Assembly (NCBI GenBank): GCA_048013815.1
Contig: CM106585.1
Coordinates: 4,960,001-5,024,000 of the forward strand
Origin: Setoptus koraiensis
Taxonomy: Eukaryota > Animalia > Arthropoda
DNA: 64,000 nt
Direction of reading: 5' to 3'
Shown: positions 11,900 through 15,444 of the stretch, in pieces
How positions within the stretch are numbered: position 1 is the stretch's first letter
Layout: every line of letters starts with the position of its first letter
Translations under genes and position numbers: made by a program
Notes under the pieces: generated by a model
Seen by the model: only the letters and a program-made list of their open reading frames with translations
Told to the model about the DNA's origin: nothing
The model's database searches: none

Positions 11900-13309
11900 A
11901 TGTCTAAATATTTATTAAGAACAATCAAACTTAGCTTGGCCCGGAGACAAATCTTCTTTCCTGGAGCCCATGACGTCGGTCGAGGCATCAGAGGTTATCA
12001 TGAGGATAACAAATACTCCCAACTGTCAGATGAAACATTGGAGGATTTAAGCGATAAATTCGATGCTCTACTCGAAACAAATCCAGGGGCCGATGTCTCT
12101 CTCAACAATGGCGTACTGACCATAGTTGTTGATGAAAACTCCACATATGTCATAAACAAACAAACACCCAATCGTCAGTTGTGGTTTTCATCACCTCTTA
12201 GTGGACCAAAGAGATTTGATTTAGACAATGCCTCTTGGGTAGAGAGAAAAACTCATACCAACTTGTATGATATTCTATCTGAAGAGTTCAGTTTCCTTTT
12301 GCAGAGGCCTGTCACAAACAAACTTAGATTAGCCATGAAACAAATAGACCCCCAAGATCGAAACATAATTATATTTCCCGGGGCCGATAACGTCCGTAAA
12401 GGCTTAGGTACCGGTTTATTATGTATTAAGGAAGCAGAAGAAACTTACAAGAGGGCCAATGATTTATTGAAATTCGACTTATTGTCTTTGTGTCTGCGCG
12501 GGCCAAACGAACATTTGGTGAATAATTTGCAGAATCGACATCTGGCAGCATTTGTCACGTCCCACGCTAGCCTGGCAAAGTTGGAACATGACTATCCCAA
12601 ATCAACTGATTATGTGTCGGGTGTAACTGGCGAGGATGTCGGCATGTTCAATTCTCTCGTTTTTGCCAATTGCCTGACATTTGAAAAGGCTCTTGAACTA
12701 GTCAAATTAAGGGCACAGGCACTGGTTAAAGCATCTGAGATAATACCTAGTGCTCAAATTCTTATTAAATTGAGACCTGCCACACAGAAACACAAGATAT
12801 GCCTTGCTGCCGAGCGCCATTGTATTGGTTTGGGAATACCTGAAGAGATAGCGGTATGCTCTATAACAAAATATTTAGGACGTGGAAGGATACAATTAGG
12901 TGGCCACCTCGAGGCGATCAAGTATCTGACTGAGGAGGGTGCTAGATTATTTGAGTTTAGAGATTTTAAAATACTACCCGATAGCTCAGGATATAATACT
13001 AAACTTATGAGACCAGTAGAGGAGTTATTAGACAGGCTTCTGAAAACTGACGATCTGAAATATCCCGACAGATGTAGAGTGTATTCAATGAGTGAAGGCA
13101 ACGAATATAAGAACGTAGAAACAATCCGCAGAGATTTAATATCACACGTGTGTAGGCCAATCAAATTCGAGCAGACCATTCAGTGTATCTATAAACGAGA
13201 TAGAGATCTTGCTCAGCCCAACACATATGTCATGTGGGATCGTGACATGCTGAAGTATTTGGATGATATCAATGGTCGCGCCAAAAGAGCAGCAAAATTG
13301 ATCAAATGA
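11900..13309 (+). CDS. FXN-MCAT: frataxin - malonyl-CoA:ACP transacylase (MCAT/FabD)-like fusion protein
   Basis: Single 469-aa ORF. aa ~35-137 carry the frataxin signatures (acidic helix LSDETLEDLSDKF, GVLTI, YVINKQTPNRQLWFSSPLSGPKRFD). aa ~150-469 are colinear with mitochondrial MCAT (IFPG, FDLLSLCLRGP, LVKLRAQAL, HCIGLGI, GHLEAIKYL, RPIKFEQTIQCIY). The N-terminus is basic and presequence-like. Confidence 0.9.
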   Translation: MSKYLLRTIKLSLARRQIFFPGAHDVGRGIRGYHEDNKYSQLSDETLEDLSDKFDALLETNPGADVSLNNGVLTIVVDENSTYVINKQTPNRQLWFSSPLSGPKRFDLDNASWVERKTHTNLYDILSEEFSFLLQRPVTNKLRLAMKQIDPQDRNIIIFPGADNVRKGLGTGLLCIKEAEETYKRANDLLKFDLLSLCLRGPNEHLVNNLQNRHLAAFVTSHASLAKLEHDYPKSTDYVSGVTGEDVGMFNSLVFANCLTFEKALELVKLRAQALVKASEIIPSAQILIKLRPATQKHKICLAAERHCIGLGIPEEIAVCSITKYLGRGRIQLGGHLEAIKYLTEEGARLFEFRDFKILPDSSGYNTKLMRPVEELLDRLLKTDDLKYPDRCRVYSMSEGNEYKNVETIRRDLISHVCRPIKFEQTIQCIYKRDRDLAQPNTYVMWDRDMLKYLDDINGRAKRAAKLIK

Positions 13310-13386
13310 GTTGAGAGATAGCTAGTTCCAATACGAATAAATCTTTTGGAAATAATTACATGAAATCGTCGAGCTAATCTGGACCT

Positions 13387-14195
13387 CTGTCTAATAACCA
13401 ACTCATGGCACCATCAACAAATAGTGTAGCGTTATTAGGCTACATGTCCCATACGTGTCTAAACACTTTAACTGAGATAAAACGTGATATGCTACAGGAC
13501 TGTCTCTACATGATTTTGTACTACCGAATCTTGGGCATTTTATTAGGTCGTTAAGACCAAACAAGGGACTTCAAGCATTCTTAGATCACATAACAATTCA
13601 CACAAAAACGAATGCCCCAGAGTTTCACATTTTGATTCTGTTTTGTGAATGTGCCACCCACCCTATTAGTATTTTGGATGATACAGAAGTTTATGAACAA
13701 AAACCCTTTTGCCCAGAAACTCTTAAAGTTATCTCAGGATTTTTAAACAATTTTGTCTTTCGTGTCATTTATAAAAAATTAATCTTTCAGGAACACAGAT
13801 TCATTCTGTAGCGAAATTGCGTATGCATCGCCAGATACGCGAATAAACGGCCGCCTTCATCAGAGGTTTTCAGACCATCGTTAATCCCGAATGGATCCGT
13901 GTTTTCAACGCCCGCATTGCAACTTCTTATTAGTGGTGACAACAATGCAATTGATATAGCCAATCTCAGGAAATATACTAAATATTTTGGTGGCTTTCAC
14001 AGTTACCATCGTGTCATCAGTTGGCAATGGGCTATACTGGAGAAGAATTTCGGCGCCGAAGAGCTTAAAATGTTCTTAAATTTCATTACGAGCTGTTCAA
14101 AGCCGCCACTACTGGGTTCCGCCAATCTATCGATATCGCAGTGGAAAATGTTACGTTATGCCTTTAGAAGTAATGCTGGCTTTGAACTGTCGTAA
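13387..14195 (+). pseudogene. UBE3B: collapsed UBE3B-like HECT E3 ligase pseudogene
   Basis: Fragments TCLNTLTEIK, LPNLGHFIRSLRPNKGLQAFLDH, LILFCECATHPISILDDTEVYEQ, SGFLNNFVF, and the HECT segment [29 protein letters not shown]...[12 protein letters not shown]...[10 protein letters not shown]...[14 protein letters not shown]. Lesions: frameshifts, an in-frame TAA at 13844-13846, and loss of the catalytic-Cys segment. Confidence 0.85.
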
Positions 14196-14551: not shown

Positions 14552-15444
14552 TCATTTGCCTAGGCTGGGATCGCGCTTTGAACTAACAAAAGCTTTGAAT
14601 CTGTCGGGAGATAGAGAATATATCGATTAGTGACCAACATAGACGCGACCAAAGTGTTCACGTAGAACAAAACTACTCTCGAGTAATAGCGAGGATCAAC
14701 TTACCTAACTATTGCCTCATCACTGACCGAGTGGTAGGTGGGCAAACTTTTCTTAACTCGATCTATATATGCCACTAATGATTTAAATTCACTCAAATCA
14801 TAGTCGCATACTTCGCTCAAAGTTAGACCGCTGACAATTGAGACATCTGCAACAGTAAGGTTATTACCGGTGGAAAATTGTTTCCCTGTGACAATATCAT
14901 CCAAATGTTTCAGAACATTTTTGAATTCTTTCTCATTCGCCTCATCCAACTCAGGGTTGCCGAAAATAAATGGTTTCAGCAATTCGCTTTGGGCCTTATA
15001 CAATTTAGTTAAATCCCAATTAAGCATCATGTCGACTTTAGCTCTTTGAACCGGATCTTTCGGGTACAGCGAATCATCTTTGCCGTATTTATTAACCAAG
15101 TAGGTGATAATAACACGACTGATTTTGTGCAGCGTAAGAGTGATAAATAAAATTGTTGGTGCAGTTAAAGCATAAAATATAAAAAGAATGAGAAAGATAG
15201 AAATTACATACATGAGAAGACATTAGGTCGCTAGGTAAGCTAACCTTTCGTAGAGAACCAGATCTCCATCCACAATAGTTGGAACAGTGTGTTGCGGATT
15301 TATCTTGAGAAATTCTTCACTCAATTGTTCACCTTTAGCTAAGTCAAGGTATTTCTTGTTTAGCTCTATGCCAAGCTTATCGGCTACCAATTCAACGGTT
15401 CGACATGGTGGGCTCTCCGGCATATAGTAAAAGTCGACAGGCAT
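14552..15444 (-). CDS. GstD: glutathione S-transferase, delta/epsilon class (3 exons)
   Basis: Exons 15444-15245, 15118-14705 and 14600-14552 total 220 aa. Motifs: DFYYMPESPPCR, INPQHTVPTIVD, LYES|RVIITYLVNKY, LYPKDP, LTVADVSI. Confidence 0.92.

What the first reader, a model, noticed from the sequence alone, without database searches (positions are those of the whole stretch)
12335..13309. The MCAT half is a pseudoenzyme: catalytic residues replaced, fold conserved
Seen, against human MCAT recalled from memory: FPGQ>FPGA; nucleophile motif GFSVG>GEDVG (Asp at 12635-12637 in place of Ser); GAFHT>SGYNT (His>Asn). The malonyl-binding Arg (LVKLRAQ) and colinear homology are retained over ~320 aa with no frameshift. 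Inference: selection maintains a non-catalytic role (scaffold, ACP binding or mtSSU assembly), so the organism either has a second active MCAT or has altered mitochondrial fatty-acid/lipoate synthesis.
Basis: partly seen in the sequence, partly recalled or inferred. Interest (0 to 1): 0.75.

Follow-up and report, generated by a model that had tools for sequence, protein, structure and literature searches.

The report
Dead MCAT enzyme fused to frataxin
In a gall/rust-type (eriophyoid) mite, the mitochondrial enzyme MCAT has lost its catalytic residues but evolution still conserves it, here fused to frataxin. Its preserved job is therefore non-enzymatic, most plausibly helping to build the mitochondrial ribosome.

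Summary
ORF 11900-13309(+) encodes frataxin followed by a full-length MCAT/FabD-like domain. That domain matches human MCAT at E 1e-48, and its AlphaFold model matches at TM 0.86-0.90.

Aligned to human MCAT:
- Gln70 is Ala (12383-12385).
- Ser153 is Asp (12635-12637).
- His270 is Asn (12995-12997).
- Arg178 is kept (12710-12712).

New here: the loss is older than the fusion. All 21 full-length relatives are stand-alone proteins of about 356 aa, one named from the eriophyoid mite Aceria tosichella. All lack the Ser (Gly instead) and the Gln. Arg and His vary freely among them. With the window they form one clade (support 100) on a long stem.

The dead family is under strong purifying selection: dN/dS is 0.14 and 0.06 in two close pairs. 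The window keeps 86% of family-conserved sites against 19% of variable ones. It is therefore a maintained pseudoenzyme, not decay.

The likeliest retained job is MCAT's known non-enzymatic role in assembling the small mitoribosomal subunit (mtSSU) with METTL17. This is inferred, not shown.

None of the 21 full-length relatives, and no hit in a 1.84-billion-protein search, carries the frataxin fusion. I could not test whether an active MCAT or mitochondrial fatty-acid synthesis exists elsewhere in the genome. No RNA data exist. The scan had noted the fusion before, on this same stretch.

The parts
11900..13309 (+). Single intron-free ORF of 469 codons plus TGA stop: leader, frataxin domain, short linker, MCAT-like pseudoenzyme domain
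   Evidence: ORF list. Pfam and NCBIfam scans. Identical in contigs of 4 runs from 3 studies. The full-length AlphaFold model has two confident domains, pLDDT 87.6 and pTM 0.73.
11900..11998 (+). N-terminal leader (aa 1-33), predicted disordered; presumed mitochondrial presequence. Residues 8-31 (11921-11992) are a diverged copy of the start of the MCAT-like domain.
   Evidence: pLDDT below 50 for aa 1-33. Local alignment score 45, reached by 0 of 5000 shuffles; DNA identity 24/30 and 28/42.
12002..12307 (+). Frataxin domain (aa 35-136), apparently intact
   Evidence: PF01491 E 2.2e-32. TIGR03422 at 101.9 bits, above its cut-off of 94. PDB frataxins E 1e-20 to 2e-23. All 32 columns invariant across the 15 sequences of alignment A2 (the window, 12 unnamed frataxins of 132-155 aa that are probably from mites, Daphnia pulex and the tick Ixodes hexagonus) are by definition kept by the window.
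12332..12352 (+).
   Evidence: pLDDT below 50 for aa 145-151.
12314..13306 (+). MCAT/FabD-like pseudoenzyme domain (aa 139-469). It starts at the position equivalent to about residue 24 of the stand-alone mite relatives, so its own presequence is missing.
   Evidence: Human MCAT E 1e-48. TM 0.86-0.90. 37-48% identity to 18 stand-alone relatives. N-terminal alignment.
12383..12385 (+). Ala (GCC) at the oxyanion-hole Gln position (human Gln70, FPGQ)
   Evidence: The family has S/A/H/E at this position.
12635..12637 (+). Asp (GAT) at the nucleophile Ser position (human Ser153, GxSxG)
   Evidence: All 21 relatives have Gly here.
12710..12712 (+). Arg (AGG) retained at the malonyl-carboxylate-binding position (human Arg178)
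   Evidence: Not conserved in the family: Q8, R6, L2, Y2 and others.
12995..12997 (+). Asn (AAT) at the catalytic His position (human His270)
   Evidence: The family has H16, N3, Y1, F1.
13336..13341 (+). AATAAA, candidate polyadenylation signal 27 nt after the stop codon
   Evidence: Read directly from the sequence. Function not tested.

Best explanation
The MCAT half is a catalytically dead descendant of mitochondrial malonyl-CoA:ACP transacylase, a pseudo-MCAT.

Shown:
- It belongs to a monophyletic family of mite proteins. One member is named from the eriophyoid mite Aceria tosichella.
- That family lost the Ser nucleophile and the oxyanion-hole Gln before these mites diversified.
- The remaining active-site residues (Arg, His) have since drifted freely.
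- The fold and about 85 other positions stay under strong purifying selection.

Inferred:
- The conserved job is structural, not chemical.
- The best candidate is the only non-enzymatic MCAT function known. In human mitochondria MCAT binds the head of the assembling small ribosomal subunit (mtSSU) together with METTL17. It holds rRNA h31 and blocks h42 docking until it leaves (PMC9892005).
- In these mites that moonlighting role would have become the only role.

In this species alone the pseudo-MCAT lacks its own presequence and is joined in one reading frame behind a complete frataxin domain. The two therefore share one promoter and one import signal.
For: Dead active site:
- Ser to Asp, His to Asn and Gln to Ala in the window.
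- All 21 full-length relatives have Gly for Ser and no Gln. His and Arg vary among them.
- Pfam PF00698 does not match. TIGR00128 fabD scores 69 bits against a cut-off of 260.9.

Fold kept:
- pLDDT 85.
- TM 0.86-0.90 to human MCAT, including the chain bound to the mtSSU intermediate, 8csp_8.

One old loss:
- The window plus the family form a clade with support 100 on a stem of 0.97 substitutions per site.
- The window is one of three basal lineages.

Purifying selection after the loss:
- dN/dS 0.137 at dS 0.44 for P0005/P0004.
- dN/dS 0.063 at dS 1.3 for P0008/P0009.
- The window keeps 86% of columns that are at least 90% conserved in the rest of the family, against 19% at variable columns.
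- The ORF is intact and identical in 4 runs.

A non-enzymatic MCAT role exists:
- Human MCAT is an mtSSU head assembly factor acting with METTL17 (PMC9892005; PMC13294482).
- The same paper describes a dead-enzyme precedent at this site: yeast Rsm22 lost SAM binding but kept its fold.

Ser-less MCAT-like proteins recur in other invertebrates, including Hyalella azteca and Meloidogyne enterolobii. The tree needs at least 5 state changes. This fits a conserved non-catalytic function in animals.
Against: - No direct evidence links the mite protein to the mitoribosome. I could not map conservation onto the human MCAT/rRNA/METTL17 interface because no coordinates were available.
- Two of the three human disease-site residues discussed for that role are not conserved (Arg212 and Glu347 positions; Leu81 is). 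This is read.
- The domain is only slightly more basic than canonical MCATs: median pI 8.65 against 8.11.
- No RNA run holds the gene, so expression is assumed. The assumption rests on conservation and on frataxin being essential.
- dN/dS could not be measured on the window's own branch, because synonymous sites are saturated against every relative.
- The window's unique Glu-Asp at the old nucleophile elbow is unexplained.
Confidence: 0.55

Rival explanations
1. ACP-docking module. The dead MCAT keeps only its ability to bind mitochondrial acyl carrier protein. Because ACP is a subunit of the NFS1-ISD11-ACP-ISCU iron-sulfur assembly complex, the fusion would tether frataxin to that complex. 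In species without the fusion, the pseudo-MCAT would act as an ACP sensor or chaperone.
For: MCAT's natural partner is ACP, and ACP is part of the frataxin-activated cysteine desulfurase complex (both established knowledge; PDB 6nzu appears among the frataxin matches). The fusion joins exactly these two proteins. The linker is short and the two domains fold independently.
Against: None of the 21 full-length relatives, and no hit in 1.84 billion representative proteins, carries the fusion. The fusion therefore cannot explain why the dead family is conserved. In the Fe-S complex ACP's acyl-pantetheine arm is buried in ISD11, and whether MCAT could dock at the same time is unknown. The ACP-binding surface was not analysed here. 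This genome has many chimeric mitochondrial genes according to earlier scan notes, so the fusion may be incidental.
Confidence: 0.2
2. Altered rather than lost chemistry. The domain still transfers or hydrolyses an acyl group using non-canonical residues, for example the window's Asp as nucleophile, as in some alpha/beta-hydrolase-fold enzymes.
For: The window has an acidic residue exactly at the nucleophile elbow and keeps the Arg. Two unrelated MCAT-like proteins, P0052 and P0078, also have Asp there, and P0078 keeps Gln, Arg and His.
Against: All 21 relatives have Gly at that position, which cannot be a nucleophile. The window also lacks the His and the Gln. Active-site positions are the least conserved part of an otherwise constrained protein. 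No family-specific invariant Ser or Cys replaces it: the invariant Cys residues are shared with canonical MCATs.
Confidence: 0.07
3. Passenger or decaying relic. In this species the MCAT half has no function of its own. It is an inert C-terminal appendage of an essential frataxin gene, or is clipped off and degraded after import, and is on its way to being lost.
For: dN/dS on the window's own branch could not be measured. There are no RNA or protein data. The window has extra active-site changes (Asp, Asn) and lost the conserved gene neighbourhood of its relatives.
Against: The reading frame runs 331 codons without a stop. 86% of family-conserved positions are kept against 19% at variable ones, as good as or better than other deep members at 71-91%. 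The end branch of 0.77 is not exceptional. The AlphaFold model is confident. Stand-alone orthologues are clearly selected.
Confidence: 0.06

Closest known systems
Human/animal mitochondrial MCAT (PDB 2C2N; 8CSP-8CSS bound to mtSSU assembly intermediates)
   Same: Same fold: TM 0.86-0.90, 34% identity, colinear over about 295 residues. Presumably the same compartment. The proposed function equals MCAT's second, non-enzymatic role on the mtSSU head with METTL17 (PMC9892005).
   Different: Lacks Ser153, His270 and Gln70, so it cannot work as a Ser-His transacylase. It misses the Pfam and TIGRFAM thresholds. Family-specific conserved residues and the C-terminal tail differ. It is fused behind frataxin.
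[quoted passage not shown]
   Same: Orthologous clade with support 100. All lack the Ser and Gln. They share the same conserved positions and C-terminal tail.
   Different: They are about 356 aa with their own N-terminal leader and no frataxin. They have Gly, not Asp, at the Ser position. They sit in a conserved bMERB/pseudo-MCAT/Ras/PI3K neighbourhood that the window lacks. The databases annotate them as active transacylases.
Yeast Rsm22 (METTL17 homologue), a dead methyltransferase kept as a mitoribosome assembly factor
   Same: An enzyme fold retained after loss of cofactor or catalytic capacity, working as a structural chaperone of the mtSSU head (PMC9892005). It is the same kind of evolutionary outcome at the same assembly site.
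   Different: Unrelated fold and protein. The role is experimentally shown for Rsm22 and only inferred here.
Ser-less MCAT-like proteins of other invertebrates (Hyalella azteca XP_018018043.1, Meloidogyne enterolobii CAK5029845.1, several unnamed)
   Same: Nucleophile Ser replaced by Gly, Asp or Asn in an otherwise MCAT-like protein.
   Different: Most keep Gln, Arg and His. Their relationship to the mite family is unresolved: one clade is not rejected (AU p 0.69), but long-branch attraction is possible. None is fused to frataxin.
Mitochondrial two-protein precursors such as yeast Arg5,6 (established knowledge)
   Same: Two mitochondrial proteins encoded as one precursor with a single presequence.
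   Different: Arg5,6 is cleaved into two active enzymes of one pathway. Here one half is a dead enzyme, and cleavage at the aa 145-151 linker is untested.

Membership tests
FabD/MCAT malonyl-CoA:ACP transacylase (EC 2.3.1.39; Pfam PF00698, TIGR00128) | Two-subdomain acyltransferase fold (alpha/beta-hydrolase-like core plus small ferredoxin-like subdomain) | tested here: met
   AlphaFold2 pLDDT 85.4. Foldseek top hits are human MCAT at TM 0.86-0.90, then bacterial FabD at TM 0.66-0.78.
FabD/MCAT malonyl-CoA:ACP transacylase (EC 2.3.1.39; Pfam PF00698, TIGR00128) | Significant colinear sequence homology to characterised MCATs | tested here: met
   phmmer E 1e-48 to 2c2n, and 24 further FabD/AT structures.
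FabD/MCAT malonyl-CoA:ACP transacylase (EC 2.3.1.39; Pfam PF00698, TIGR00128) | GxSxG nucleophile Ser (human Ser153, E. coli Ser92) | tested here: not met
   GEDVG: Asp at 12635-12637.
FabD/MCAT malonyl-CoA:ACP transacylase (EC 2.3.1.39; Pfam PF00698, TIGR00128) | Catalytic His of the Ser-His dyad (human His270, E. coli His201) | tested here: not met
   SSGYNT: Asn at 12995-12997.
FabD/MCAT malonyl-CoA:ACP transacylase (EC 2.3.1.39; Pfam PF00698, TIGR00128) | Oxyanion-hole Gln in FPGQG (human Gln70, E. coli Gln11) | tested here: not met
   FPGADNV: Ala at 12383-12385.
FabD/MCAT malonyl-CoA:ACP transacylase (EC 2.3.1.39; Pfam PF00698, TIGR00128) | Arg that binds the malonyl carboxylate (human Arg178, E. 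coli Arg117) | tested here: met
   Arg at 12710-12712. The position is variable in the mite family, so its presence is not evidence of substrate binding.
FabD/MCAT malonyl-CoA:ACP transacylase (EC 2.3.1.39; Pfam PF00698, TIGR00128) | Passes the curated family HMM thresholds | tested here: not met
   PF00698 gives no hit even at E up to 1. TIGR00128 scores 69.4 bits against a cut-off of 260.9.
FabD/MCAT malonyl-CoA:ACP transacylase (EC 2.3.1.39; Pfam PF00698, TIGR00128) | Malonyl transfer from CoA to holo-ACP | not testable with these tools
   Needs an enzyme assay.
   Clade support 100. 74 of 86 conserved columns kept. R9, N106, PAT148-150, F208 and W301-D302 are present. The one difference is Asp instead of Gly at the Ser position.
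MCAT as mitoribosomal small-subunit assembly factor (human, PMC9892005) | Binds the pre-mtSSU head with METTL17, sequesters h31 and blocks h42 | not testable with these tools
   No coordinates, no mite mitoribosome data. Only the overall fold match to chain 8csp_8.
Frataxin/CyaY (N-terminal half of the same ORF) | Frataxin domain above curated thresholds with conserved beta-sheet residues | tested here: met
   PF01491 at 111.8 bits against 21.3. TIGR03422 at 101.9 against 94. All 32 invariant columns of alignment A2 are kept.

The most novel reading that the evidence does not exclude
Eriophyoid mites have no active mitochondrial malonyl transacylase at all. Their only MCAT gene survives purely as a mitoribosome small-subunit assembly factor, a natural separation of MCAT's two functions. 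In this species its fusion to frataxin physically couples iron-sulfur cluster supply to the METTL17/MCAT checkpoint on the assembling ribosome (METTL17 carries a frataxin-dependent [4Fe-4S] cluster, PMC11046306).
Probability: 0.12. Interest if true: 0.85.

Novelty: new variant of a known kind. Interest (0 to 1): 0.62.

Why it matters
Human MCAT has two roles that are hard to separate experimentally: loading malonate on mitochondrial ACP, and chaperoning the mitoribosomal small-subunit head. It is debated which role underlies MCAT disease (PMC9892005).

A whole animal lineage that keeps a well-conserved MCAT lacking its nucleophile is a natural separation-of-function allele. Expressed in MCAT-deficient cells, it could show directly which phenotypes depend on catalysis.

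It also raises a concrete metabolic question: how, or whether, these tiny-genome mites run mitochondrial fatty-acid and lipoate synthesis.

On the practical side, databases currently annotate these proteins as active transacylases, which this analysis contradicts.

The frataxin fusion adds a possible, unproven, link between Fe-S biogenesis and mitoribosome assembly.

Tried and rejected
1. Exact look-up of the 469-aa product in public assemblies found nothing on record, so no annotated source record was found.
2. Word-index protein searches with the whole ORF and with the MCAT half found only the 18 mite relatives. Canonical MCATs needed the full HMMER search.
3. Fusion elsewhere: phmmer with the frataxin half against every MCAT-like hit gave no frataxin in any.
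4. dN/dS for the window's own gene: pS is 0.77-0.86 against all relatives, which is saturated and unusable. The four runs laid carry no polymorphism and no diverged sister copy.
5. Synteny: none of the neighbours of the relatives' pseudo-MCAT or frataxin genes occurs in the window.
6. A pseudo-specific Cys/His metal site (C156, C163, C175, H191) was rejected. The same Cys residues are common in canonical MCATs.
7. A strongly basic, RNA-binding surface: only a small shift, pI 8.65 against 8.11 and net charge +4 against +2. Not decisive.
8. I first read the ORF's N-terminus as frataxin's own presequence. The better-supported reading is a diverged copy of the pseudo-MCAT N-terminal segment. The first 7 residues remain ambiguous.
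9. Expression: no RNA run holds the stretch.
10. A literature search pairing MCAT with 'pseudoenzyme' found no paper using both terms.
11. Second MCAT in eriophyoids: the nearest canonical hits are from a fish, crinoid, mayfly, lancelet, slug, millipede, tardigrade, molluscs and unnamed contigs. None could be assigned to an eriophyoid, and that is not evidence of absence.

Full report
WHAT IS THERE

Window 11900-13309(+) is one uninterrupted ORF of 469 codons. Its parts are:
- Residues 35-136 are a frataxin domain: PF01491 E 2e-32, and TIGR03422 at 101.9 bits against a cut-off of 94.
- Residues from about 139 to 469 are homologous to mitochondrial malonyl-CoA:ACP transacylase (MCAT/FabD). phmmer against PDB gives human MCAT 2c2n at E 1e-48 and the full-length chain 8csp_8 at E 6e-48, then about two dozen bacterial FabD and trans-AT structures.
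- Pfam's Acyl_transf_1 model does not match at all. TIGR00128 fabD reaches only 69 bits against a cut-off of 260.9. The domain is clearly MCAT-derived but strongly diverged.

CHECK OF THE OBSERVATION

In the alignment to human MCAT, with human numbering counted from the 8csp_8 coordinates:
- FPGQGSQ becomes FPGADNV: Gln70 to Ala, GCC at 12383-12385.
- GFSVGEF becomes GEDVGMF: Ser153 to Asp, GAT at 12635-12637.
- SGAFHT becomes SSGYNT: His270 to Asn, AAT at 12995-12997.
- VKIRAEA becomes VKLRAQA: Arg178 kept, AGG at 12710-12712.

The codons were read. The same columns are recovered in a MAFFT alignment with 167 homologues.

An AlphaFold2 model of the half is confident (pLDDT 85.4, pTM 0.85). 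Its best PDB matches are human MCAT at TM 0.86-0.90 and rmsd 1.7-2.0 A.

The DNA is not an assembly artefact. Contigs of four public runs from three studies are identical to the window across the gene. One contig spans everything, and two others bridge the frataxin/MCAT junction.

THE LOSS IS OLDER THAN THE FUSION

Protein searches found 18 relatives at 37-48% identity. All are about 356 aa and none has frataxin. One is named from the eriophyoid mite Aceria tosichella. A full HMMER search of 1.84 billion representatives added a few more family members and then canonical animal MCATs.

Every one of the 21 full-length relatives has:
- G[IVFL]G[VI]G, with Gly in place of the nucleophile Ser;
- FP[DSN] followed by S/A/H/E, with no Gln;
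- a His position that reads H16, N3, Y1, F1;
- an Arg position that reads Q8, R6, L2, Y2 and others.

By contrast, the 63 nearest other MCAT hits are almost uniformly FPGQGSQ / GxSxGE / R / H.

In a maximum-likelihood tree the window and these proteins form one clade (SH-aLRT 100) on a long stem of 0.97 substitutions per site. The window is one of three deep lineages.

The three deep lineages (the window, P0016, P0033) share Ala at the Gln position and still carry the Arg. The window alone still has the Gly of FPG. The simplest history is therefore:
1. Ser and Gln were lost once, at the base of the family.
2. The rest of the active site then eroded piecemeal.
3. The window's Asp arose secondarily from Gly (GGN to GAT).

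Earlier notes of this scan identify the genome as an eriophyoid (gall/rust) mite. I did not test that independently beyond the Aceria hit and the intron-poor, compact contigs of the relatives.

IT IS MAINTAINED, NOT DECAYING

I fetched coding DNA of four relatives and computed Nei-Gojobori estimates:
- P0005 against P0004: dS 0.44, dN 0.060, dN/dS 0.14.
- P0008 against P0009: dS 1.3, dN 0.083, dN/dS 0.06.

Both pairs diverged long after the catalytic loss.

For the window itself, synonymous sites are saturated against every relative (pS 0.77-0.86), so dN/dS cannot be given. I used a site-pattern test instead:
- Of 86 columns at least 90% conserved in the other 21 members, the window keeps 74 (86%).
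- At variable columns it matches the commonest residue in only 19%.
- Other deep members score 71-91% on conserved columns.

Its terminal branch (0.77) is in line with its depth in the tree. The catalytic positions are thus the unconstrained part of an otherwise constrained protein, which is the signature of a pseudoenzyme.

The family also has invariant residues with no counterpart in canonical MCATs. These are R9, N106, P148-A149-T150, F208 and a C-terminal W-D tail, in the numbering of the MCAT half. They are candidates for a new or reinforced interaction surface.

WHAT IT PROBABLY DOES

The only non-enzymatic function known for MCAT comes from cryo-EM of human mtSSU assembly intermediates. 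There MCAT, together with METTL17, holds the 3' major (head) domain open. It sequesters h31 and blocks h42 until it leaves (PMC9892005; confirmed in later structures).

The same paper notes a dead-enzyme precedent at the same site: yeast Rsm22 lost SAM binding but kept its fold.

I therefore consider retention of this assembly-factor role the most likely explanation, at roughly 45-50% on its own. The broader statement 'maintained non-catalytic pseudoenzyme' is near 90%.

This step is inference. I could not map conservation onto the human interface, and the domain is only slightly more basic than canonical MCATs.

Rivals:
- ACP docking, which in the fusion would tether frataxin to the NFS1-ISD11-ACP complex.
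- Altered chemistry using the Asp. This is unlikely, because relatives have Gly and the His and Gln are also gone.
- An inert passenger. This is unlikely given.

THE FUSION CONTEXT

Stand-alone frataxins of 132-155 aa occur in unnamed contigs that are probably from related mites. In two of them, frataxin and the pseudo-MCAT lie 9.4 kb apart on opposite strands of the same contig. The window shares neither gene neighbourhood.

Structure of the fusion:
- The junction is clean. The last frataxin residues are followed directly by the pseudo-MCAT from about its residue 24, so the MCAT half has lost its own leader.
- Residues 8-31 of the ORF are a diverged copy of the start of the MCAT half. The alignment score is reached by 0 of 5000 shuffles, and DNA identity is 24/30 and 28/42. 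This supports the scan's earlier 'sandwich' note.
- Both copies read FPGA, so Gln to Ala predates that duplication.
- The full-length AlphaFold model has a disordered leader (aa 1-33), two confident domains and a 7-residue low-confidence linker, with pTM 0.73.

No MCAT-like protein in 1.84 billion representatives carries frataxin.

Frataxin deficiency depletes the [4Fe-4S] protein METTL17, MCAT's partner on the mtSSU head (PMC11046306). A functional coupling is therefore conceivable, but it is speculative. Earlier scan notes list many chimeric mitochondrial genes in this genome, which raises the odds that the fusion is incidental. Cleavage after import, as in yeast Arg5,6, is also possible.

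BEYOND MITES

Ser-less MCAT-like proteins also occur in Hyalella azteca (GYGLGEL), Meloidogyne enterolobii (GFGLGEF) and several unnamed sequences. Two of the unnamed ones have Asp at the position.

On the tree the Ser state changes at least 5 times. However, an AU test does not reject a single clade of the mite family with four of these sequences (p 0.69). A shared old paralog and long-branch attraction therefore cannot be told apart.

I found no paper that describes MCAT pseudoenzymes.

OPEN POINTS

- Whether the genome has an active MCAT or the other mitochondrial fatty-acid-synthesis and lipoate genes could not be tested. An earlier, unverified note says PDH-E2, a normally lipoylated protein, is present.
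- There is no RNA evidence.
- The meaning of the window-specific Glu-Asp pair at the old nucleophile elbow is unknown.

VERDICT

The metabolic corollary is untested.

This is a new, undescribed variant of a known protein family. It offers a useful natural separation-of-function case for MCAT's moonlighting role.

Noticed in passing
window 11921-11992 vs 12314-12409: ORF residues 8-31 are a diverged copy of residues 139-170, the start of the MCAT-like half, with an 8-codon gap. The frataxin core therefore sits between two copies of that segment. Protein score 45 is reached by 0 of 5000 shuffles; DNA identity is 24/30 and 28/42. Both copies read FPGA.
   Followed up: partly
window 13320-13494: A multi-copy repeat lies immediately 3' of the gene. 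Additional contigs 85-90% alike lie on it in runs X2 and X5, with loose ends on both sides.
   Followed up: no
L008:7764-8174 and L008:17566-18174; L009 likewise: In two related mites, stand-alone frataxin (136 aa) and the pseudo-MCAT lie on one contig, 9.4 kb apart on opposite strands, separated by acetyltransferase, PI3K, two small genes and a Ras-like gene. This loose linkage may have preceded the fusion.
   Followed up: partly
proteins P0084 (Hyalella azteca XP_018018043.1), P0094 (Meloidogyne enterolobii CAK5029845.1), P0052, P0078, P0046, P0049, P0058, P0071, P0081, P0155: MCAT-like proteins outside mites whose nucleophile Ser is Gly, Asp or Asn, most with Gln, Arg and His intact. MCAT pseudoenzymes may be recurrent in invertebrates. 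P0078 has Asp with every other catalytic residue kept.
   Followed up: partly
window 13899-14195 (+): A 98-aa ORF matches only the middle of a HECT ubiquitin-ligase domain (Pfam positions 177-257 of 306, E 4e-18). It is either an exon of a split gene or a gene fragment.
   Followed up: no
window 14701-15444 (-): A delta/epsilon-type glutathione S-transferase lies in two adjacent ORFs (15444-15223 and 15213-14701). It apparently has one short intron and looks ordinary.
   Followed up: no
window 12632-12637: The window alone has Glu-Asp at the former nucleophile elbow (GEDVG). All 21 relatives have a hydrophobic residue plus Gly there. The meaning is unknown.
   Followed up: no
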